Source of the DNA: Chlorokybus atmophyticus
Taxonomy: Eukaryota > Plantae > Mesostigma and Chlorokybus algae
Assembly (NCBI GenBank): GCA_009103225.1
Contig: RHPI01003369.1
Coordinates: 146,911 to 210,910, forward strand
DNA: 64,000 nt
Direction of reading: 5' to 3'
Shown here: one piece after another, positions 48,000 through 64,000 of the stretch
How the letters are laid out: every line of letters starts with the position of its first letter
Position numbering within the stretch: the stretch's first letter is position 1
Notes under the pieces: model-generated
Seen by the model: the letters and a program-made list of their open reading frames with translations, nothing else
The model's database searches: none
What the model was told of the DNA's origin: nothing
Translations under genes and position numbers: made by a program

Positions 48000-50452
48000 C
48001 TACCCCTTCCCTTCCCCCACATTGCTCTGTCCCTGCTGCATCATCTCGCCTCCCCCTCTTCCACCCAAGAAACTCTGCATGTGCTCTCTGGTGCTGATAC
48101 TCAGTCTGGGTATGGGCGCCGCGAGCAGAGTGCGATCAAACTCCCCAGGTGATAGCATGGGAGAGAACAAAGACTCGTCCACCGGGGGGTAGGTGATGTC
48201 GGAGGAGGAGGAGGAGCACTCGGGGATGAGGATGGAGAGGGGAGCGGAGGGGTGGGAGGAGAGAGGGGATAAGGTGGGGTCGGCGCGACTGGACCTGCAG
48301 GGGGTGGGATGCATGTTGGAGGGGAGGAAAGCAACACGCACGTGCACGCGCATGTAAAACACACACGCACGCCCAGGTACACACGCATGCGCGTGCGCGC
48401 GCACCCACACACAAGCACATGCACGCACATGCGCACACACGCCATGACAATGACTCACGCGTACCGTCTGCCTCCAATGGAGCGGTTGGGTATGGCGATG
48501 CTGTTGTCGGGGGCGCGCGCGCGCGGGTGGGGCGGCAGCTTGCTGCCGTTATTGTTGTTGCTGTTGTTGTTGCTGCCAGGACCCAGCATGCTGCGCTTCT
48601 CACGCATCTTGCGCGAGGAGTAGTTGTCCTCGTTGTCGCTGCCCTTGTGCGGACTGCCCAACTCCAGATCTGGGAAAAGGGGATGGTGAGCACACGCACA
48701 CCACATCACACATACCCACATGTCAGCAACTTGTGCGAACGGACTTTCCACCTCCAAGTAAGAAGTAAGATATGGCAAATCACACACACGCACACACATG
48801 CACGCGCGTGCGCACGTGCACACACTGACATATGCATGCACGCACGCGCACAGACTCGCACACACATACACAACGTCACCCATGCCCACATGCCCACATG
48901 AGGTCACCTCTCACCCCAACAACCCCCCCTCCCTTCCCCCCCCCCCCCCCCCCCCCCCCNNNNNNNNNCGTTGTGCTGTGCCACCTCCTCGGCGACCCCA
49001 ATTCATCCACCAATAACCTCTTCGCTTCGTTCCCATCCACCACTTCGATCGGTCTCACCCTGACCCTCTTGATCCTCCCAATCACGCTCCCCCCACTCCC
49101 GGTGATGTTGATACGTCGTGTAATTGACAAGGTCCGGCCCGCGGCCCAGAGGCCGAAGGCGATGAGGGCGGAGGCGGAGAGGACCACGGCGAGGTAGGGG
49201 GGGAGGAGGGGAGGGGAGGAGTCGAAGTCCACGGAGGGGAGGGAGGGGAGGGAAGCTGAGAGAGAAGGACAGTCAGACTTGTGGGTATGCGTGTGGGTGT
49301 GCATATGCATGCGTGCGCACACGCACACATTGGCCCACGGAGGCATGCAAGCACACACATTCCGGCATGCAGGAGCTCGTGTGCGTGCGTGAGCACACGT
49401 GTGTGTGCGTGGGCATGTGTGCGTGTGTATGTGTGTGCGCGCACACCCTGATACACGTATGCTTGCATAAGGGGTGTAGAGACATGCGGGCATAGACATG
49501 ACCACAAGCGCATGTTGTTGCCCATATGCGAACAAGCAGTGGTACTCACCGCTAAGCTGTCTGTTGTTGACCGCTTCCTCTGCCACTCCCTCAATCTCTC
49601 CCACTCTCCACATATACTCCGCCACCGGCCTGTTGTCCCCACCCTCACCCTCACCCTCTTCACTGTCCACCACGCTGCGCACACGCACAACGTGCCAACC
49701 CGAGGGCGAGTCGGGTGCCTGTATCGGGCTCGAGCACGGGACCCACGCAAGATTGTTGGAGTTGTACTCGAGCTTTGGAACGCACGGGCCCGTGTTGATG
49801 ATCGATACAACATCTTTGGGAACGATGATAAGGGCGGATGCGGTGTTCCCGCCGCAACGCAGTTGTTGGGTGTGTTGTTGGGTTTGTTGGGTTGGTGTGG
49901 GGATGAGTGGAGTGCAGCCGGATGATACTGCGGATATGACTGATGAGGGGAGGAATACTTTGGTTGTATCGACACCGCAGAGGTGCCAACCCGAGTCGCT
50001 TGGCTGCGGACAGACGTGTGCACAAAATGTGGGTGTGATACACGCAATTGAGTGAAGTTGTGGACTCAAACTTAGGAGGGAAGCTTGAAAGTTGGCAGAT
50101 GTTGGGATATCAAGGATTGGTGTGAAGCACAACATGTATGGGTGCGTGCGTGTTTGACCATGTGTGCGCGCACACGCGCACGCGTGTGTGTTTGTGCGTG
50201 CGTGCGTGCGTGTGCGTGTGCGTGTGCGCGTGCGCGTGCGTGCCTCACCTTGGCAACAGACAGCTGGCATTCTGTCGGTCCAGCTGCTTCAAAGGCGATG
50301 ATACCCTTAGTACTGTTTGATTGCAACCCAGGCGCCGATATGATGCGCACGGAAGAGGATAGATATCCGTCATGTGCATTCGCTGTTGATGGATACAGCA
50401 GCAGTAAACTACAGCAGACCCACACGGTGGTCACCCACACGCCGCCTGGCAT
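48000..50452 (-). CDS. Orphan type-I membrane protein (signal peptide, Cys-containing ectodomain, one TM, low-complexity tail); spans an assembly gap
   Basis: MPGGVWVTTVWVCCSLLLLYPSTANA..., ectodomain exon PSDSGWHLCGVDTTKVF...WHVVRVRS, TM YLAVVLSASALIAFGLWAAG, tail exons DLELGSPHKG... and ...NVGEGKG*. Confidence 0.65.
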
Positions 50453-53374: not shown

Positions 53375-56300
53375 CTATGTGAAGCTGTAATGGCAGAGCA
53401 CTGCAGCTTGCAGCACAGTTAATAGTGTCCTGTCTGCCTCTGTAACGCTTGTCAAACTGGTGCCGCGGCAGCTCCACTCTGATGGTGAGCATCGCGAAGG
53501 TAAGTCCACTACGCACAGGTGCTCTCCGTTTTGTTTTCTAAGGTAAAGTGGGCAAGAGTGGAAGCTTCCCGCGGCCGACTGCAAGGCATCAGCCAGCCTG
53601 CACGGTGTGAACAGGATGCACAACTGTTGAGTGACGTTGGAGCCGAGCGTGCCAATATCCGCGCATCCCATGTCACTATCAAATGCGAGGACCTCCTGCC
53701 GGCTGTCCCATAATGCGCCCATCAGCACCACGCCGGACAGCGCCACGCTCGCTGATGTTGTTGGCACTCCAACCGTGCTGGAAGCGGCCCGGAAGCTCAA
53801 CACCTGTGCCTTGAAGGCCGCATCGGCAAGGCTGATGCTCTCCGCACGGGCATACTCTTGAAGACATGCGAGGAGGAGCCTGTCGGGACGCACAATCTCC
53901 GCCAGATCGTAGCTCCGTAGCACTGCGCCGCTGTGCCAACGCTCCAAAAATCGCACGCATCCAGCTGCTGACTTCAGCAGAGAGGCGTCCAATGTTGGGG
54001 AAGCGGTGCTGTGCTGCGACAGAGGTATCGGCAGCGTCCGCGATAAGACTCCCAGTATGGCATCCATGTCTTCAGCTTCTTCCAGCAACACGGCGCTGGT
54101 GAAGCTCTTGCTTACGGGCCAGGCTTTGCGCATGGATCTTAGAGAGTTGGTCATGTCATCAAGCTGCAAAGGTATGGACTTTGCTGCCACAACTGGTGTG
54201 GCCCCATTGCCGGGTGCAGATATACGCGGTAACAGGGATAGGAAGTGAGTATATCCATTGCGCAGAGCAGACACGTGCGCACGTGCAGGCAGGAACAGGA
54301 GATCGATATCTGCGCTGGGGGGTAGGATGTCTGTCACCCAGCGGTTTATATCTTCCAGGTACACGTTGTCTGGTGGCGCACCAACGGTTCGGCTTGACAC
54401 AACGTACTGGTCAGTGAGTATGAATCTGGAAACAAACTTCTCTAACAGAGCCTCACACTGCTGGGCGTCAAACGGGTTGCCCAAAAGAGTTGAATAGACT
54501 GTGGAGAGCGATGATGCGAGTGTTCGAAAGTCTAATGTGCAGTTCTCTGCCAATGCGTTGACGTGTTGTTGGATTATAACCAGCGCAGCCATGAAGTCAT
54601 TGTGGCTCCAACATGGCGATATCCTCCAGCCGGCGCCCGCATACCTGCTACCTCGCCAATTGGCCACAGCGTGGAAGAGTATCAAACCAAAGGCGCAGCG
54701 CTTGAAGGCATTCATTTGCTGCGGGCGAAGCAACTCCATGCCTGGTCTGTTTACTGATGTTGGCAAGCTATGATAAGAAGCAAAGACAGCGTCACGCAAG
54801 CAGGCCGGCTCGCCAATAACAACAACATGCCCGGCGGCGGCGATATCAACAGTGAGACGGGTTACATCGCTCAGCTCCATTAGCAGCCAGAGACGAAACT
54901 CTTCGCCACTATCGCGCTCAACGAGATGCCGATGCACACGGCGCAGCCATGTGGAGGTGATATCGGTGCACTGAACACAAAGCCAGTCGCTGAGGCGCTG
55001 CGCATCAGCAATGGCGAGTGAGACCTCGTCGATATCATCGTCCTGCGCCACGGATAACAGCTTTGCTGCCGGCAACCCCACGCGCCTTGCCAGCTGGCGC
55101 ATCAGCAGCATGGGTTCGGCCCCACGCGTGGCGCACATGACAAATATCGGCGTCGTGCGCGTGGACCGCTCCAGAGCAACTCTGAGCCGAGAGACGGCAT
55201 CAGTGGATATCGATGCCGCCTTGCACCCAACCTGAGTGCACAACCACTCCATTGCGGCCAACCCGTAGTCTGGGTAAGCGCTCTGAAGCAGACACATGTG
55301 TTGGAAAGCAGTGAGTCTGTTCACCCAATGCTCAGGCAGCGGGGATATCGCTGCAGCGGGGGTGTCGTCGACATCCCCGCCACACGCAATGGCCTGCATC
55401 TTGCGCCGACACGACTCCCACAACACAACCTCTTTCTCTCGCAGCGCTTGCACTCCATTGAGTAAGTGCTTCACGGGGTAGTACACAGCTAATTCAGATA
55501 GAGTTTGCACGCCCTCTTGCCGGATGAAGAAGTCCCATTCGGAGTCTGTGACCTTGCCAGTATCTCTCAGGAACATTGCCGAAGCAAGCAATCGCAGGAG
55601 AAGCATCTGCTCGTTGAGTAGTGAATTTGCAAAGCCCCGCATAGTGTTGGCGACGGCTTCTGATACAAACGCTGGAGCGGATATTGCCGCCTCCTGGTTG
55701 GCCTCTTCTATGCCTTCCAGCGCCTTGGTTATATGTATCGCATAGTCAGATGCAAAGGAGTCCAAAGACACCAGCGGCACTGATATCCTTGGCATCAGCT
55801 GCCGAGCGGCCGACATTGCACAGACAGCGTGTCTCCCGAGCCTCACCAACCCGGGTGATATCGCTGGCACGGCCTCGATGTCTGTCAAAGCCTGGGCCAA
55901 CCTCCCCTCATACTCCTCCAAGCTGACTGTAGTGGCAACCAGAGTATCAACCAGAGTGCTGTCATTCCAGACCTCCCCGCCCGACTTGGATATCAGCACG
56001 ACAGTCTTCCTCATCAGCTCCTGGATCATGTCTGAGGCTGTGTCGTGGTCGGATATCAGCCGCTGCAGGTGGTCGGACACCAATGCCGGGCGCAGTTTGC
56101 GTGACATGAAGGCCCTCATGCCCTCCCCAGAACGACGACAATCCACCACGTTGAACATGTCAAACACCTCTGCAGGCATACCCGGCGTGTTTGCCTCCCG
56201 CGTGTACAGTATCAGCCTTAGGCCCTGCGCTCTGTCCACCGCATCATCCACAATACAGCCTCCCGCCCCAGCACCTGCGTATGTACATAGCGTTGTACAC

Positions 56301-59300
56301 TTGTTCATACGTAATTCTGCTCGTAGTATGTGCATGCCGATTGCATACATGCACACGGGCACGCGCTTGCACGGACGCACACGCATGGACACACGCATGC
56401 ACACCCAAACCAGCGACCTACCTCCATATGCCATCCCGTACTCCGGCATGTTGGCTCGCATGCGTGAGAGGACAGCAACATCATATGGTGCTGCGACTTC
56501 CAGTAGGACAGAGGCTCCCGAGCGGACACTCTCCTGGATGTTGGCAATGAGGTTGGGTTCCCACGCGGTCATCTTGCGCCACCTTGCGCCGGTACGCAAC
56601 ACGGACCCAGACCCAATCAACCCCACAACGGCCCCGTATGGATCCACCAACAGAGGCCGCTGTCGGCTGAACCCGATCGTGGCCACGGTCTCGCGCAGGC
56701 AGCGTTCTGAACACTTGCTCTCACTCAACACCCACGGGGACTTGGTCTCACGGAAGGCAAGGAACGGCAGGAGATCAAAGCTGGAATTCATCTCTACCCC
56801 CACAGCTGCAATGGATAGTAGGTTAGCTAAGAGAGTGTGACCCTCAATGCAGAATAATTTTTACACAGTAATGCGCGTAGCACTATGTTCTCAAAAGTGC
56901 CTAGCAATGCATGATTACAAGAGCACTGGCCAAGTTGCAGCATACAAACTGCCTGTAAGACAAGCAAGAATTACAGCGGTATGTATGCCATTGTATGCCG
57001 TTGAATGTTACATGCTGACACGCACAGTGCGAATCCAACTGAATGTGCAGTTACGGTGTGCATGTGCTGACGGTTTTAGCACCTCTTTGACACACCATGC
57101 ATGCCGGCACAGCAGCATACCCCAGTTGTACACACGTACGCACAGGATACCAATCTACACGGGGCGTAAGCATATTCAGTTACTACGCAACATAGAAGCT
57201 GATGGGCGCTCTCACCTTTGCCTTCAGTGCGGAGGTCCTGCAGTGCCTTACTCCGTCCTGCAGGCCCGAATGGCGCCAGGTGCGATAGGCATGCGGCGGC
57301 GAGGGCGGCAAATCCGCGGAGGTTGGCGGCGCGGGCGTCGAGCTCCAGGAGATACGCCTCCCACTTGGCCTCCTGCCCCGCCAGCGTCCCGACCATTGCA
57401 CGCAGCTGGGCAATCTCCGCCAGCAGAGCATCGCGTGCCGTGGAAAACTTCTCCTGCGTCGCCAAGGTCTTGCTGCGCCGCCCCTGCTTGACAACGATCT
57501 CCTGCGGGTAATCAACATGACCCGTAAGCGGACAGCGGACTTCGACTTCAATGCGTATGTCAGTGGCATTGCACACAGTATCAAAAGATTGTCTAAACAG
57601 TTGGAATATCAACGACGAGAGAAAGTGAGACAGGGGCGGTGGTGAAGAGTGTGTGTCTGCATGTGTGCGTGCGCATGTGTGTGCAGATTGCTTGCACCAT
57701 GAAAACTTGCAATCACATTTTGACTTTGAGTGCCCTGCGTACCTCTTCCAGCGCATGGACGCGCTCTTGCATCTGGATAGCAGTCTGCTGCGTGACCTCA
57801 ATACGGCGCTGGGCCTCTGCGATCTTCTGAGCCTTGAACACAGCCGCGCCTTTCACTTTGGTATACCCGTCGACAGCAAGGACCCAGGCACACAGGTAGC
57901 TGCAAGCGTGGTTGGATTGCTCGACGGTGGTGGGCCTGAACGACGGGTAGCGCACGTACTTCTGTAGACTCCTGAGCGTGGCGTCGGCCACGCGCTCGCG
58001 GTCGAACCTCTCGAGGCGGGACCTGAGACTGATGCCGGCAATGGCGGTGTTGATGGACTCCATGAGGAGACGTCTCACGGCGGGCCAGTCGGGCTCGAGG
58101 CCGAGTAGCAGGCAGATGGACTCCATGACGAGGCGCACGAGGCCGGGAGGGGTCTGGTACCCGCGCACGGCCTGGAGGTCCTCGCGGGTGACGTGGCGGA
58201 GGTCGGCGAGGGCATCGGCGTACGCGGCCTCCGCACGCGCGAGGTCCTCCTCAGTGGTCTCTCTAAGGGTGGCCACCTGAGCAAGGGTGCGGGACACGCG
58301 GGCCTCGTCCTCAGCCAGACGTGCGTGCAGCTCGTCCACAGATCGCTCCGCGTCCGTCACACCGACAAGCAACTCGCTCGACTCACTCGCCGCTGACGCA
58401 AGCAACGGCTCCACCTCAGCCAACTCCGCGTCGCGCTTTGCCAGCCGCACCCGCGCCGCCGACAACACTCCGCACGCTGTCCTCACCCTTGCCGTCTCCC
58501 GATTCAACAACTGACACGAGTAGGTATGTATCAGAAGCATGCACTCCAGCAACCAAAGGATCAAGCGTTGCATATGTGTCGACATGACGTGCTGCACTCA
58601 ATAGCCCACTTTCCTCACCTTCTTGTGGTTGGTAATAAAGGTCTTGATGTGGTGGACGAGTTCAGCAGCGGCAGACAAGGGCACATGCAATGCGAGGGAG
58701 GCGGGGTCGAGGTCAATGGACAACCTATCATGCTCCTGCGCTGCAGCGTGCGTGACGGCCCACTTGTGCACGCATACACACAACTTAGCGAGGGACTGCG
58801 GGTCCTCGATGACAGAAGCTTGGCTGGACTCAGATGTAAGCGACTCAAGGAAGAAGGGGTACAACTCCTCGTCTATGGGCGGGTGGAACATGTTGGGTAG
58901 GAGGTTTGCATGGAGGGCAGGGTGCGTCGATGCCAAGGATTGGTAGGTTGTTGGTGAGGTGACGAGTACGATGTGGAGGTTGTGTCGCACAGCTGCGGCA
59001 AAGAGAGCGTGCGAGTCCTTGTACGCGGCCTTGTTGGGCACGTCGTCGATGCGATTAAAGTATAGAGTCGCCGCCGTGTCGATATCTGCCTCCGATATTA
59101 ACCCAGGTACCCGGCCCGACATCATCAATGGGGTGAGGAGGTCCAGCAGCTCGGGTCGGCTGGACTCACGCTCGAGGACAAGGAGGACCGTTGTTGACAC
59201 AACAGCTTCAGATATCGCTTGCACGACAAGCGCTTCCAGCTCTTCTGCAGGTGTCGCTGAGTCCTCTCCCCCGCTGATATCACCAATGCGGATGAGCTTC

Positions 59301-62300
59301 GCCCCGACCAGGCGGGTAGATATCTCTGCTACGCTGCGGCGCCCCAAATTCGGCCCTCCAACCAACGCGCAGCTCCCATTGGGCCACAACGAGTCCAACC
59401 TTCTCACCAGCCTCATCACGTGGTTCATGAAGCCGGGAAAGAGCGCCTTCATAGGCGCGAGCATGACTCGGGTCGTTGTCAAGAGCTCGTGCTCGATATC
59501 GAACTGAATGCGCGGGATCTGCTCATCGATAAGTGCGCGCCACTCCGACCTCGCCTTCCCATTGCTAACATCGCAGTACGACTCCGGGCCCCCAGACAAA
59601 GGTAACATCACCACCGCGGGCTCGGGTGCGAATATAAGGGCTCCCGGCTGGGCTTCAGGCCAGACTTCATGAACCTCATGACACAGCCACGCGAGCACGT
59701 TGTCAAACAGGTTCACGCTGGCGCCGATATCGATCCCGTCTCTGCACTCACGCACAATCTCGTGAAACCATATCTGATGGAGGGCGACAATACTTGCAGC
59801 GGGGTCGATGGCGTCCAACGCACGGAGAGCAAGCCGACATGCCGAATGCATTGCACGACAGAGCGGCTTCAGCAGCGGGTTCAATTCGACAATGTTCATC
59901 GTACGCAATTTCTTTATCAACAGCAAGGAGGATGTTATGAGTGATGCAGAGGATATCCACTCTGGATGCGCTCCCCCGAGTGTGGATGTCGCAACCGCTA
60001 CGAGCACCGCCCTTGCGAACAACTCAGCCACCTCGTCCTCCGTCCGCATCATGAAGAAGTGACGAAGCAGCCGACTACTCGCATACGACATGCTCTCATC
60101 CGCCACCCCAACCACGTGCACACCCTCCACCCTGAGCAAGCAAGGCACTTTGAACAACTTCCCTGATACGAAACTGATGTTGTCACTACACATGTACGTA
60201 CTACTGTACGTTGTGTTTTTCACAGTCAAGGCAAGAGACATACATTAACTCACCTGTAGTGCGTGCCTTCTTCTGAGTGGTAGAATGTACTCGAGTCCAA
60301 AAGTTGTCTCACCCACTCGTGCGCTTTGGGCGCTCTCGCGCTCACTCTCCCGCGCGTGCACACGCCAACATGAAGGTCATCGACAACAAGGACGGGCTCT
60401 TTGTTCCGCGGTCGGACACCCCCACGGCCATCCTTCTCCGCAGTCTCCATAAGAGCAACCTTGAGGTCATTGGCACGGGTGGTGGCGGTGATGTGGACAT
60501 GTGGAGGCAGGGACGCATCCCCACCCTGTCTCAAGTATACCCCCATCGCCGCGCACGTCTTGCCTGACCCACGTGGGCCTGTTATCAGCAACGGCCGCCC
60601 AGACAACGCCAGCAGGCGCGCCAGTTGCCTGCACGCGAGGGCGAAGGGCGTTGGGACCCACACGCACAACGGCGAGGAGAGCAGAGTCTGGTGCCGATGG
60701 CCTGGATGCGTGCCCGCTGCAGTCGACCAGCCGCGTGCTGTCCCCTGTTCATGTTTAGAGTACGTCAATTGCATCATGTCTACTGTTCCACGCACACGCA
60801 CATCCGCCTGTGTACACATGTTCAACACTCACACACGAGTGCAGACCCCCCCCCACACACACACACCCCTCCCTCCCCCCTGGGGTATGCGCAACCACAC
60901 GCGCGCGAAGACACACACTCTTCATTGTGCTGCAACTAACTTGCGGTGCGAGTCCGGGACCTGCTTCGTCTTCCCACGGGACAAACCGCTGCCTCATGAC
61001 GCAGATTCTGTAGTCAAAGCTGGCAACATGCACAAACTCTCAGGCCAAAACGCTCACACCCAGCAACAACCCTCATGCACACGCACCGCAACATCCCTCG
61101 CTTACAGCGTGGTGGCGTGGGTCATGCTTGATGACGTTGAAGGCGCGGGCAACACGGCCTCGAGGTTGCGGTTAGAAGCTGACCGGCAATGGTCCCGCAG
61201 TGCGCGGTCTATGCGCAAGCACACTTGATTGTGTTGTGATGTTGTGGTGTGTTGCTGGGACATTGATCTCGATGCTCGCGTGCCAGGGATGCGACACGTG
61301 CTTGACAAGAGCGCCCACGCCACCGTGAACAACACGTACATGTGCACTAACGGCTCGGTTGGCTTGGACCCGTCCCCATGATGGACCCAAAGGAGGCTTT
61401 CCATCAGCTCAAAGGCGGCCGCCAGGGTAATATCGTCCCCGCTGTCACATGCATGCACGGCCATGGCAGCTCCCGCCGCAGCGATATCAAGCAGGGGACT
61501 GTCCACGAGCCATGGGCAGCGCGCTCCCGCATGTTTGATGAACGCCTCACATGCTTGTGAAGGGAGTTTGTGCTGGTGTAATGTGGTGCCTGGGATGTGG
61601 AGGAGGGCAGCGGAGAGCAGCAGTGAGGGGGGTGCATGAGGCATGGTTTCCAGTTCGTAGATGATGGGAATAGAAGCGGGCGTGATGGAAGAACATGCCA
61701 ACGCGCTGCCATCGACCACAAGCCATGCCGGTGTGCCTGACAGATAGGGTACTTGAGTTGCAACAAACATGGCCACACACGCACACGCACACACATGGCG
61801 CACGCACATGCACGCGCGCGCACAGCTCCTGCTATAATTTGTACACAGGGGCATGTTGGGCCCCTCATCTTGACAAACACTCACCTTTGACGAGCTTGAG
61901 CTCCTCCACAGCCTTCACCACGACCTCCCTCGCTTCGGCCTCGTCATACGCGCCAACGTAGACAGCTCGCTGGACTGCTCCGCACGCTTGCGCGAGAGCC
62001 TCCCGCACCCATGTCTTCCCGCACCCCGCCACTCCCAACACAACCACAACGGCAGCCTCTCCCCATCTCCTCTTGCCACTCTCAATCATGTCGTACAACA
62101 TCAGCGCCCGCTCTGACACAGCCATTCCTCCTTCACCGCCGTCCAACTTCATCGCTATGAGCTGTCTGACTTCATTAGTGCCAGGATGTGGTGATGTGGG
62201 TATCAATGAACCCCTTCTGGAAGGAGTGACACAACTCTCTTTACTCCCCGCATCGCAAAAGGTGTCTTGAGCGAGCGCGGTGAAGAGATAAATATCTTTC

Positions 62301-64000
62301 TCATTAAAACGTGGGGATAGCGCCGCAATGCACGCAGAGAGCATCACGCTGTCAGATGATGGTGGTATGTCCGACAACAATTTGTTGTTAATAGTTTTGC
62401 TGTTGAAGTTGTTGCTAAGTCGAGTGGTAAGTATCTCCTCCGTGCAGGCAGCAACTGCTTTGACCTCTCTCAGACCAAAGTCATGCACACCCGGCCGGTG
62501 CGACAGCCTTGCTTTCAGAGCCTGAGTGAATGCAGCTGGTAAACATGTGTGGATGTGAGCGCAGAGGTGCGGGCGTGTGTGTATATGTGTGTGTGGGTGG
62601 TTACACGCGCATATGTTGGCATGCATGTGTACACGTGTGCTTTCTCTTGCCTTGAATAGGCAAGCACATTTGCGAGCGGCATCATGGGCTTGCGGAAGGC
62701 CGACGGACGCAAGCCGAAGCTCCAAAGCAACCTGTTGAGCGTGAGCAATGAGACACAAACCAACATAACGTCACACACAACTGCTTACCTGCATGTCTAA
62801 GGCTGGCAGGGCGACGCGTCTTCCGAGCCACTGGACAGTGCGGTGTATGTGTGTTTGTGCATTACTATTATTATTGTGGCTGTCAACATCAGCAATGAAG
62901 CAAGCGAATCCCGGCAAGACCGTGAGAGGGGCCATCTGATCCCCACGGGATCTGTATCGGTCCTTGCCCGCAGCCATGGCCTCATACGCAGCACGAAGGT
63001 GGTTCACCACGCCGCTCGGTACACTCTCACTCACACCCTCCAACACAACCCATGCCGCACATGCCGCCGCCCCCGCCACGCGCATTGCGAGCGACAACGC
63101 TGATGACGACGAGGACGGGAGCGATAGCACCCAGCGGCCACACGCTGCGGCAACCTCGCGGACGGTCTCAATATCAACACCGGCGCACATGCGGCCCGAG
63201 GCCACGCAGGAGAGGACGGCGTGAAGGGTGACAGGAGAAACCGGGTGAAGACCCCTCACCTGGTGTTACGTTGGGTTGGAGTTGTTTGACTGAAAACTGT
63301 CAATGGTAAGCACGGAATACTTACCTCTCCTCCAGTGTACTCCCACCCGTACTCTACACGCGCATCCAGCGCAGATACCATGCATCCGTCGATATCTGGC
63401 TCCCACATGCACTGCAATGAGGAGCATATTGGTCAGTATAGAACTGCTACTGTTGGCAACGCATGCAAGACACTGATTGTGGTTTTCACCTGCATTTTGG
63501 AGGCCCAGTCATACTCGTCCGTGCGCCCAACATTCTTCTCCACAAGCTCCTCCACAACAAGTTGATGCGCGGCCGTGAGAGCCGCCAGCTGTCCGTACAC
63601 CAACACGCCCTGGGTGTCCCCCACGTCACGTGCACGCTTCTTCCCGAACGCGGCCAACGTCCTCGTCGTGCTCTCAAGCAAGTCCCGCAAAGCCCTCCTG
63701 TGGCCTTTTCGCCTCGCCTCGAAGGCCGAAGCCACGGCGTCGGTCCACACGATCTCGTGCACGAGGGCGATCGATTGCAGCGGGAATGACGTCACCCACT
63801 CGTCCTGAGGCGTGGACAACACGGACCCGAGACACTCGCGCGTCTTCGCCTTGAACGTGCCGTTGATCTCACGGGTCAACCGACCGATCCATTCGTCAGG
63901 AGCGGTTTGGATCGAGTCGGACACAACAACGGGAGAGCCGAAGAGAAGCTCCTCGCCATGACGGGAGCATACGCCGACGATGGAGAGATTTGTGTATGAG
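53375..64000 (-). CDS. Highly divergent dynein heavy chain (5' part outside the window) with a degenerate AAA1
   Basis: Linker (FPLQSIALVHEIVWT...EYDWASKMQ), YGWEYTG, HDFGLREVK, AAA2 GVAGCGKT, AAA3 GPRGSGKT/VDDLH, AAA4 GGPNLGRR, stalk/MTBD (TPPGLVRLVMESICLLL..PDW...ACSYLCAWV), AAA5 RPLLVDPYG, and a C-terminal CPLY...LPS...W..RG segment. Long stop-free ORFs. Confidence 0.9.

What the first reader, a model, noticed from the sequence alone, without database searches (positions are those of the whole stretch)
62790..63400. Dynein heavy chain with the AAA1 P-loop lost: candidate motor-dead dynein
Canonical AAA1 reads YEYLG..RLVITPLTDRCY..L..AL....GGAP.GPAGTGKTET.KDLA, and AAA1 is the main force-producing ATPase (established). 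Here the spliced sequence reads YGWEYTGGE|VRGLHPVSPVTLHAVLSCVASGRMCAGVDIETVREVAAACG, with no GPAGTGKT and a shorter loop (about 63140-63205). The Walker B region reads WVVLEGV instead of W.CFDEFN. Yet AAA2 (GVAGCGKT), AAA3 (GPRGSGKT), the stalk/MTBD and kilobase stop-free ORFs are kept (seen). This suggests a selected pseudo-enzyme acting as a microtubule tether, scaffold or regulator, comparable to divergent DNHD1-like proteins (inference).
Basis: partly seen in the sequence, partly recalled or inferred. Interest (0 to 1): 0.78.

Follow-up and report, generated by a model that had tools for sequence, protein, structure and literature searches.

The report
Expressed algal dynein with dead AAA1
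The streptophyte alga Chlorokybus transcribes and correctly splices a very divergent dynein heavy-chain gene whose main ATP-burning site (AAA1) has lost its nucleotide-binding loop, so it most likely binds microtubules without moving, and it looks like one member of an old green-algal lineage of such "dead" dyneins.

Summary
On the minus strand (53375 to beyond 64000) lies an intron-containing dynein heavy chain. Its AAA1 exon (62789-63259) reads exactly as quoted. It has no GxxxxGK[ST], is about 10 residues shorter than normal there, has VLEGV in place of the Walker B CFDEFN, and has lost the sensor-I Asn.

Spliced RNA contigs cover 62787-63255 without a break, so no hidden exon restores the P-loop. 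The 63259|63325 junction itself was not bridged. The published gene model (JGI Chlat1 5828, 2426 aa) starts in AAA2 and omits these exons.

The protein is an extreme orphan. Of 1.84 billion representative proteins, only itself scores below 1e-30.

Its nearest relative is a Cymbomonas protein (KAK3233895) that also has a degenerate AAA1. The two AAA1 modules match each other (E=2e-9) but ours does not match a canonical AAA1 (E=0.09). They share an insertion after the AAA3 Walker B and group together in mixture-model trees. It is not a DNHD1 orthologue.

The reading as a selected pseudo-ATPase is supported by intact frames, codon pattern, expression, a conserved stalk and microtubule-binding domain, and the apparently old lineage. 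The tether role is inference. The N-terminus lies outside the window. An overlapping note from this scan (s1-079836) flagged the same gene.

The parts
63490..64000 (-). Exon A: end of the linker (DHC_N2-like). The open frame runs off the window edge, so the gene continues upstream.
   Evidence: 170 open codons. Weak match to the last 50 positions of DHC_N2 in the expected place (E=0.17). Aligns with the canonical linker end. RNA joint 63411->63490.
63412..63489 (-). Intron (78 nt, GT..AG).
   Evidence: Spliced contig in run X1. Splice sites read.
63325..63411 (-). Exon B (29 codons): CMWEPDIDGCMVSALDARVEYGWEYTGGE, the start of AAA1.
   Evidence: An RNA contig covers about 63323-63411.
63260..63324 (-). 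Predicted 65-nt GT..AG intron, phase 0. Not bridged by any contig.
   Evidence: GTAAGT donor and CAG acceptor. Flanking RNA contigs stop at 63255 and about 63323 without loose ends.
62789..63259 (-). Exon C (157 codons): the large alpha/beta subdomain of AAA1, catalytically degenerate.
   Evidence: A colinear RNA contig covers 62787-63255 with no differences. AAA_6 is matched only at E=0.11, in register. BLASTP gives E=2e-9 to the Cymbomonas AAA1 and 0.09 to a canonical AAA1. The AF2 model has pLDDT 73, and its top 47 PDB fold matches are all dynein motors.
63164..63202 (-). Remnant of the Walker A site: ASGRMCAGVDIET in place of GPAGTGKTET. No Lys/Thr remains, and the region is about 10 residues shorter.
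63032..63052 (-). Walker B equivalent: WVVLEGV in place of WACFDEF (Asp to Glu, catalytic Glu to Gly).
62882..62899 (-). Sensor-I equivalent: FIADVD in place of FITMNP (Asn lost), followed by an Asn/Ser-rich insert.
62732..62788 (-). Intron (57 nt, GT..AG).
   Evidence: RNA joint reported as 62729->62787 with cut +2. Sites read.
62651..62731 (-). Exon D (27 codons): VALELRLASVGLPQAHDAARKCACLFK, the start of the AAA1 small subdomain.
62522..62650 (-). Intron (129 nt) with a GC..AG boundary.
   Evidence: The loose end of a contig at 62523 continues with sequence found at 62653. Boundaries were worked out.
61885..62521 (-). Exon E: rest of the AAA1 small subdomain (VHDFGLREVK at 62459-62485) and the start of AAA2, with an intact Walker A GVAGCGKT (62012-62035). 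The published protein model starts here, at MAVSERAL (62102-62125).
60253..61735 (-). AAA2-AAA3 exons. The conserved AAA2 segment after WLVVDG (61708-61725) is deleted. AAA3 keeps Walker A GPRGSGKT (60556-60579) and has Walker B VVDDLHVG (60364-60387), followed by an insertion shared with Cymbomonas.
   Evidence: Pfam AAA_7 3.4e-13. RNA joints at 61736-61883, 61020-61105 and 60131-60252. Alignment.
58619..60130 (-). AAA4 exon of 504 codons, with Walker A-like GGPNLGRRS (59333-59359). The Arg-type loop is normal for axonemal DHCs.
   Evidence: Pfam AAA_8 3.5e-14..
57716..58510 (-). Stalk coiled coil and microtubule-binding domain (MTBD, 57854-58156), well conserved.
   Evidence: Pfam MT 5.9e-17. 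Alignment. Retention 67% in CC1 and 48% in the MTBD.
53375..56860 (-). Final exon of 1160 codons plus a TAG stop (53375-53377): AAA5, AAA6, lid and C-terminal domain.
   Evidence: Pfam AAA_9, Dynein_heavy, AAA_lid_11 and Dynein_C. PDB best hit 2.6e-20. The chance of 1161 open codons is about 8e-23.

Best explanation
This is a real, transcribed, correctly spliced gene of Chlorokybus for a dynein heavy chain that has diverged extremely.

What is kept (shown): the end of the linker, six AAA modules in order, the stalk and MTBD, and the C-terminal domain.

What is lost (shown): AAA1, the module that normally binds and hydrolyses the ATP driving the power stroke, is a pseudo-ATPase. It has no Walker A lysine or threonine, the segment is shortened, the Walker B glutamate is replaced by glycine, and the sensor-I asparagine is gone.

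Lineage (fairly well supported): the gene belongs with Cymbomonas tetramitiformis KAK3233895 and an environmental relative (P0049) in an orphan lineage of axonemal-type dyneins. AAA1 had probably already degenerated in their common ancestor, that is, early in green-algal evolution. Chlorokybus then lost a further 10 or so residues at the site.

Mechanism (inferred): ATP binding at AAA1 is what releases a dynein from its microtubule, and nucleotide-free dynein binds tightly. This protein most likely cannot step. It probably sits in an apo-like, ATP-insensitive, microtubule-bound state and serves as a static link, brake or regulator, presumably in the zoospore flagellum. AAA2 and AAA3 keep Walker A motifs and could still bind nucleotide as a structural or regulatory ligand.
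For: Sequence and motifs.

Domain order: Pfam AAA_7, AAA_8, MT, AAA_9, Dynein_heavy, AAA_lid_11 and Dynein_C, with weak in-register DHC_N2 and AAA_6 matches.

Expression and splicing: seven GT/GC..AG joints on the minus strand, and a colinear contig over the whole AAA1 exon.

Coding constraint: open frames and GC3 0.62-0.77 against intron GC 0.49. P(1161 open codons by chance) is about 8e-23.

Orphan status: of 1.84e9 representatives, only the protein itself scores below 1e-30. The next hits are 1.4e-25 and 3.2e-21. Its end branch is 3-4.5 substitutions per site against a median of 0.74.

Link to Cymbomonas:
- Trees join them at SH-aLRT 100 and 99, even with P0049 breaking the partner's branch.
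- They share 17 novel residues at conserved columns, against 1-10 for the control pairs that involve either of them; one other pair that is sister in the same tree (P0196-P0178) shares 13.
- As independent data, the AAA1 exon matches the Cymbomonas AAA1 at E=2e-9 and a canonical AAA1 at 0.09. There are 45 exclusive matches against 3-16 for the others.
- They share DLHV plus an insertion after the AAA3 Walker B, and a degenerate AAA2 segment.
- They share WVLAVD.Y.K and VEQ in the MTBD.

Regional conservation: AAA1-large keeps 25% of conserved positions, stalk CC1 67% and the MTBD 48%.

Fold: the AAA1 exon is predicted as an alpha/beta domain that matches dynein motors.

Background: AAA1 is the principal hydrolysis site, ATP binding there releases the MTBD, and apo dynein binds microtubules tightly (PMC7215579).
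Against: - No biochemical, proteomic or localisation data exist, so the function is pure inference.
- The exon B/C junction is not bridged by a contig.
- The N-terminus and tail lie outside the window. Whether the protein can dock on an axoneme is unknown.
- The Chlorokybus-Cymbomonas grouping joins two long branches (warnings). It is not a reciprocal best hit: the best hits of P0003 are canonical dyneins.
- No orthologue was found in any other streptophyte.
- The very long branch is also what relaxed selection would give.
- Unchecked notes from this scan report other decaying flagellar genes in this genome.
- The AF2 model was built on an alignment of dynein AAA1 sequences, so its fold match is partly circular.
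Confidence: 0.68

Rival explanations
1. Ghost gene in decay. It would be a dynein paralogue that lost its function, perhaps as Chlorokybus reduces its flagellar apparatus. It is still transcribed and spliced but drifting, and the protein does nothing useful.
For: Extreme branch length. Only 25-42% of canonical conserved positions are kept in the AAA modules. No close orthologue was found. The annotators' model omits AAA1. Unchecked scan notes report decaying IFT dynein and IC78 genes in the same genome. DNHD1 was long described this way (PMC8754002).
Against: There are more than 3,000 codons without a stop or frameshift, although the branch length implies several substitutions per site. The coding GC3 pattern is kept. 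All seven observed splice joints keep the frame. The stalk and MTBD are selectively conserved. The AAA1 degeneracy is shared with a flagellate chlorophyte, and that lineage has another member at 34% identity. The state is therefore old and has been maintained.
Confidence: 0.15
2. The protein really starts at the annotated methionine in AAA2 (62125). The upstream AAA1-like and linker-like exons would then be an untranslated leader or a separate relic, giving a truncated AAA2-to-C-terminus protein.
For: The only public model (JGI Chlat1 5828 / Chrsp4S06362, 2426 aa) starts at MAVSERAL.
Against: Exons A-E stay open and in phase for about 595 codons upstream of and through that Met. They have coding-type GC3. 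They align in order with the linker end and AAA1 of dyneins, and significantly with the Cymbomonas AAA1. RNA contigs splice them precisely onto the downstream exons.
Confidence: 0.08
3. Assembly or gene-model artefact. An unseen exon, an alternative isoform or a misassembly would hide a normal GPAGTGKT P-loop.
For: The exon B/C junction is not bridged by a contig. The window ends inside the gene.
Against: The place where the P-loop should be lies inside one uninterrupted exon. That exon is covered by one RNA contig identical to the genome over 62787-63255. Walker B and sensor I are also degenerate in the same exon. The closest relative shows the same degeneracy.
Confidence: 0.03

Closest known systems
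Cymbomonas tetramitiformis hypothetical protein CYMTET_55825 (KAK3233895.1; P0003) and the environmental fragment P0049
   Same: Best non-self relative in trees. Its AAA1 is also degenerate: GSPGLCLGG in place of GPAGTGKT, CLEECH in place of CFDEFN, and the sensor-I Asn lost. The two AAA1 modules match at E=2e-9. Both have PGFACF, ACGR, DLHV plus an insertion after the AAA3 Walker B, a degenerate AAA2 segment, and WVLAVD.Y.K in the MTBD.
   Different: Only about 22-27% identical overall. Cymbomonas keeps the canonical length at the P-loop, while Chlorokybus is 10-11 residues shorter. Cymbomonas has also lost the AAA3 Walker A, which Chlorokybus keeps. Cymbomonas has a long N-terminal part, which could not be seen for Chlorokybus. 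The protein is uncharacterised and is not a reciprocal best hit.
DNHD1 (Kollmar class-11 dynein; the 'ghost' or 'orphan' DHC of animals)
   Same: A divergent DHC whose AAA1 is poorly conserved and lacks the catalytic Walker B residues. It was thought non-motile yet is needed for flagellum or cilium formation (PMC11785096; PMC8754002). The Chlorokybus protein works like it only in the sense of being a presumed non-motile dynein.
   Different: Class 11 is reported as specific to metazoans (PMC5100056). The DNHD1-like sequence P0195 keeps an AAA1 P-loop (GPSGVGKSET) and does not group with the Chlorokybus protein. It is not an orthologue.
DNAHX / dynein-X (sea urchin sperm; PMC11785096)
   Same: [quoted passage not shown] It shows that cells keep dead dyneins for a purpose.
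   Different: DNAHX derives from the outer-arm alpha chain, is restricted to animals, still binds ATP at AAA1 (locked pre-power-stroke), and has an MTBD disrupted by insertions. The Chlorokybus protein has no P-loop at all, has a well-kept MTBD, and its nearest canonical relatives are single-headed inner-arm types. The predicted locked state is therefore the opposite one: apo-like and microtubule-bound.
Unclassified 'orphan' dyneins of Kollmar 2016 (including Chlamydomonas DHC12/pcr4 and a Klebsormidium orphan)
   Same: Bona fide DHC homologues outside the 17 classes, with very divergent motors, proposed to be axonemal (PMC5100056).
   Different: That study did not analyse the ATP sites and did not include Chlorokybus.

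Membership tests
Dynein heavy chain (motor domain) | Six AAA+ modules in one chain, in the order AAA1-AAA6, with lid and C-terminal domain | tested here: met
   Pfam AAA_7, AAA_8, AAA_9, Dynein_heavy, AAA_lid_11 and Dynein_C are colinear on the minus strand. AAA_6 is matched only weakly but in register. PDB hits are all dynein heavy chains.
Dynein heavy chain (motor domain) | Coiled-coil stalk with a microtubule-binding domain between AAA4 and AAA5 | tested here: met
   Pfam MT 5.9e-17. The MTBD aligns without large indels and keeps PP.LV..VME..C.L.G...W...FD...LC.WV.A..Y.KV.
Dynein heavy chain (motor domain) | AAA1 Walker A GPAGTGKT, the principal ATP site | tested here: not met
   ASGRMCAGVDIET at 63164-63202, with no GxxxxGK[ST]. 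The RNA contig is colinear there.
Dynein heavy chain (motor domain) | AAA1 Walker B (CFDEFN) and sensor-I Asn (TMNP) | tested here: not met
   VLEGVS and IADVD.
Dynein heavy chain (motor domain) | Linker (DHC_N2) and N-terminal tail | tested here: inconclusive
   The last 170 or so residues of the linker are present at the window edge. Everything upstream is outside the window. Look-up of the genomic neighbourhood failed.
DNHD1 (class-11 dynein) | Groups with DNHD1 sequences in a motor-domain tree | tested here: not met
   DNHD1-like P0195 (Ostrea) falls elsewhere in both trees. Long branches make this less than decisive.
DNHD1 (class-11 dynein) | Metazoan distribution, with the AAA1 P-loop kept but the Walker B catalytic residues lost | tested here: not met
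   The host is a streptophyte alga. P0195 has GPSGVGKSET and FDD, whereas here the P-loop itself is gone.
DNAHX subfamily | Descent from the outer-arm alpha heavy chain, with characteristic insertions in the stalk/MTBD and AAA4 | tested here: inconclusive
   No DNAHX sequence was in hand. The nearest canonical relatives here are single-headed inner-arm types (DNAH6/12-like, Chlamydomonas DHC2). The MTBD has no insertion.
Green-algal orphan lineage typified by Cymbomonas KAK3233895 | Specific similarity of the degenerate AAA1 module | tested here: met
   BLASTP E=2e-9 against 0.09 for a canonical AAA1. Identity is 29% against 15-18%, with 45 exclusive matches against 3-16.
Green-algal orphan lineage typified by Cymbomonas KAK3233895 | Monophyly in trees, and shared rare changes | tested here: met
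   SH-aLRT 100 and 99 under LG+C20, with a long-branch warning. Shared insertion and DLHV after the AAA3 Walker B. 17 shared novel residues.
Green-algal orphan lineage typified by Cymbomonas KAK3233895 | Reciprocal best hit | tested here: not met
   The best non-self hit of P0001 is P0003, at 279 bits against 274 for the next. The best hits of P0003 are canonical dyneins and P0049.

The most novel reading that the evidence does not exclude
Green algae carry an ancient family of motor-dead dynein heavy chains, dating to before the streptophyte-chlorophyte split. Its AAA1 became a pseudo-ATPase and has been kept for roughly a billion years as an ATP-insensitive microtubule-binding element of the flagellum. 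That would make it a third, independent origin of non-motile dyneins beside the animal DNHD1 and DNAHX, and one locked in the opposite state (apo-like and microtubule-bound).
Probability: 0.4. Interest if true: 0.72.

Novelty: new member of a known kind. Interest (0 to 1): 0.55.

Why it matters
Non-motile dyneins have only recently been taken seriously. DNAHX was described by cryo-EM in 2025, and DNHD1 has been linked to sperm flagellum formation. All known cases are from animals.

A transcribed, intact heavy chain from a streptophyte alga that lacks the AAA1 P-loop altogether, with a chlorophyte relative sharing the degenerate site, would show that eukaryotes have turned the dynein motor into a static microtubule-binding scaffold more than once. 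It would offer a natural "rigor" dynein for structural and mechanistic work.

On the practical side, the published Chlorokybus gene model is truncated. It starts in AAA2 and misses at least five expressed coding exons.

Tried and rejected
- Pfam and PDB sequence searches of the AAA1 exon alone gave nothing significant. The only PDB hits were spurious antibody chains.
- Looking up the contig that encodes the annotated protein, to read upstream of the window, failed: the protein is not on record there.
- Three word-based homologue searches (P0001, the P0003 motor, and the two-sequence profile A1) found only canonical dyneins and no new family member.
- I first took AAA4 GRRS and AAA3 Walker B DD for extra degeneracy, or for traits shared only with Cymbomonas. 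Alignment showed both are normal in axonemal or IFT dyneins, so I dropped them.
- The 38-sequence MAFFT alignment left AAA2-AAA3 of P0001 unaligned. I redid it with L-INS-i on 13 sequences.
- My first comparison of exon C with P0003 used the wrong subrange. I repeated it correctly.
- Descent from DNHD1 was considered and rejected.
- Without P0003, the Chlorokybus protein attaches to no class. No canonical parent class can be named, only that the best-scoring relatives are single-headed inner-arm types.
- The overlapping scan note says the gene has no N-terminal tail. This could not be checked.
Exons were used one at a time by reference.
Full report
**What is there.**
The window is GC 44-60% eukaryotic DNA with short introns. 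Earlier scan notes name the organism as Chlorokybus. The exact match of the large exon to EukProt EP00898 Chlorokybus atmophyticus, JGI Chlat1 5828 / Chrsp4S06362, confirms this.

The finding lies on the minus strand. From 64000 down to a TAG at 53375-53377 there is a chain of open frames. Pfam reads them, in order, as dynein AAA_7 (3.4e-13), AAA_8 (3.5e-14), MT stalk (5.9e-17), AAA_9, Dynein_heavy, AAA_lid_11 and Dynein_C. These scores are tiny for a dynein. Against the PDB, the 1161-residue last exon reaches only 2.6e-20, and its best hits are single-headed axonemal heavy chains.

**The observation.**
The quoted peptide is exact. Exon B (63325-63411) ends ...YGWEYTGGE. A 65-nt GTAAGT...CAG intron follows. 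Exon C (62789-63259) starts VRGLHPVSPVTLHAVLSCVASGRMCAGVDIETVREVAAACGRW.

I aligned the exons one at a time to 11 canonical heavy chains. The results:
- GPAGTGKTET is replaced by ASGRMCAGVDIET, with no lysine or threonine.
- The segment is 10-14 residues shorter. BLAST puts the gap just before the loop and MAFFT puts it on the loop.
- Walker B CFDEFN is VLEGVS.
- Sensor-I TMNP is ADVD, followed by an Asn/Ser-rich insert.
- The HYDFGMRA motif of the small subdomain survives as VHDFGLRE.
- AAA2 (GVAGCGKT) and AAA3 (GPRGSGKT) keep Walker A.
- The AAA4 loop GRRS and the AAA3 Walker B DD are the usual axonemal forms, not extra damage.

**Is it an artefact?**
Logan contigs of run X1 were filed without a library type. 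They skip 58511-58618, 60131-60252, 61020-61105, 61736-61883, 62730-62786 and 63412-63489, all with GT..AG ends on the minus strand. A loose end also implies a GC..AG intron at 62522-62650. The run is therefore spliced RNA and the gene is expressed.

One contig lies on 62787-63255 with no differences. The place where a P-loop should be is thus continuous in the mRNA, and no hidden exon can restore it.

The exon B/C junction is not bridged. Contigs stop at 63255 and about 63323, a few bases from the predicted sites, with no foreign tails.

Exons A-E (170, 29, 157, 27 and 212 codons) stay open and in phase. GC3 is 0.62-0.77 against 0.49 in introns. A 1161-codon open frame has a chance probability of about 8e-23.

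The public protein model starts at MAVSERAL in AAA2 (62102-62125). It omits all of this.

**How unusual is the protein?**
HMMER against 1.84 billion representatives found 243 proteins at E<=0.001. Only one scored below 1e-30, and that was the protein itself. Next came a canonical inner-arm-like chain (1.4e-25) and Cymbomonas tetramitiformis KAK3233895 (3.2e-21).

In LG+C20 trees its terminal branch is 3-4.5 substitutions per site, against a median of 0.74. Without the Cymbomonas protein it attaches to no class.

**A family.**
The Cymbomonas protein also lacks the AAA1 P-loop (GSPGLCLGG), has CLEECH for Walker B, and has lost the sensor-I Asn.

The two proteins join in the motor-domain tree (SH-aLRT 100). 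They also join in a C-terminal tree that includes P0049, an environmental fragment 34% identical to the Cymbomonas protein that shortens the partner's branch (SH-aLRT 99). The longer DNHD1-like branch does not attract either of them. treekit warns that long branches meet, so I looked for independent evidence:
- They share 17 novel residues at conserved columns, against 1-10 for the control pairs that involve either of them; one other pair that is sister in the same tree (P0196-P0178) shares 13.
- The AAA1 exon is absent from the tree data. It matches the Cymbomonas AAA1 at E=2e-9 but a canonical AAA1 only at 0.09. It has 45 exclusive identities against 3-16 for the others.
- Both have DLHV and a 6-8-residue insertion after the AAA3 Walker B, and both have lost the DALWIENMN segment of AAA2.
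- Both have WVLAVD.Y.K and VEQ in the MTBD.

Against the family reading: the Cymbomonas protein's best hits are canonical dyneins, and three word-based searches found no further member.

I put the family at about 75%. If it is real, AAA1 degenerated before streptophytes and chlorophytes parted, and the further shortening is specific to Chlorokybus.

**What is conserved.**
The table gives the share of positions conserved in at least 8 of 11 canonical chains that the Chlorokybus protein keeps.

| Region | Kept |
|---|---|
| AAA1-large | 25% |
| AAA2-AAA6 and C-terminal domain | 28-42% |
| MTBD | 48% |
| Stalk CC1 | 67% |

AAA1-large is the best-conserved module in normal dyneins, with 128 such positions, yet it is the least kept here.

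An AF2 model of exon C was built on a 13-sequence alignment. It gave pLDDT 73 and pTM 0.70, an alpha/beta domain. Its top 47 PDB fold matches are all dynein motors. The alignment was made of dynein AAA1 sequences, so this is partly circular.

**Mechanism.**
It is established that AAA1 is the principal hydrolysis site, that ATP binding there closes the AAA1/AAA2 gap and releases the MTBD, and that nucleotide-free dynein binds microtubules tightly (PMC7215579).

The rest is inference. With no P-loop, this chain cannot run that cycle. It most likely stays apo-like and microtubule-bound regardless of ATP, acting as a passive link, brake or regulator in the zoospore flagellum. AAA2 and AAA3 may still bind nucleotide.

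This is the opposite locked state to DNAHX. DNAHX keeps ATP in AAA1, is fixed pre-power-stroke, and has a disrupted MTBD (PMC11785096).

**Comparison and novelty.**
Divergent or dead dyneins are a known kind. DNHD1 is called a ghost or orphan gene, forms Kollmar's class 11, is specific to metazoans, and has lost Walker B. DNAHX is a second case. Kollmar also lists 75 orphans.

The Chlorokybus gene descends from neither DNHD1 nor, as far as could be judged, DNAHX. It is a new member of that functional kind from the green lineage, with the most complete AAA1 loss of the three.

The main rival is decay under relaxed selection, at about 15%. The long branch fits it, as do unchecked scan notes of other decaying flagellar genes in this genome. 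The intact frames, splicing, conserved MTBD and shared ancient degeneracy argue against it.

**Limits.**
- The N-terminus is outside the window, and the neighbourhood look-up failed.
- There are no dN/dS, proteomic or localisation data.
- An overlapping note from this scan (s1-079836) flagged the same gene and claims it has no tail. I could not test that.

Noticed in passing
window 62102-64000 (-): The published Chlorokybus protein model (JGI Chlat1 5828 / Chrsp4S06362, 2426 aa) starts at an internal Met in AAA2. It omits at least five upstream coding exons, which RNA contigs show to be spliced onto it. The annotation is truncated.
   Followed up: yes
window 62522-62650 (-): An intron with a GC..AG boundary instead of GT..AG. 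It is inferred from a 17-nt loose end of one RNA contig.
   Followed up: partly
window 60839-60882, 61767-61823, 62567-62602: Introns of this gene carry (TG)n/(CA)n-like simple repeats. The read-laying tool skipped them as repeats, and RNA coverage is zero over 60401-60800, so that part of the exon structure rests on the annotated model only.
   Followed up: no
P0072, P0056, P0109, P0141 (insect DNAH7/12-like proteins from the search): Several animal inner-arm-type heavy chains in the hit list also lack an intact AAA1 GPAGTGKT (for example GSAATGKVQT, GPSATGKTGI) and have altered Walker B motifs. They form a supported clade with DNAH12 in the tree, so AAA1-degenerate paralogues may be common in insects.
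   Followed up: partly
P0196 and P0178 (MetaClust proteins, 5147 and 3651 aa): Two further very long-branch dynein-like proteins without an AAA1 P-loop group together (SH-aLRT 86; 13 shared novel residues). Their organisms are unknown.
   Followed up: no
window 48876-50288 (-), with 9 Ns at 48960-48968: A 464-470-aa open frame just downstream of the dynein gene, in a GC-rich (0.60) stretch with overlapping ORFs on both strands. It has no Pfam match, and a short assembly gap lies inside it.
   Followed up: partly
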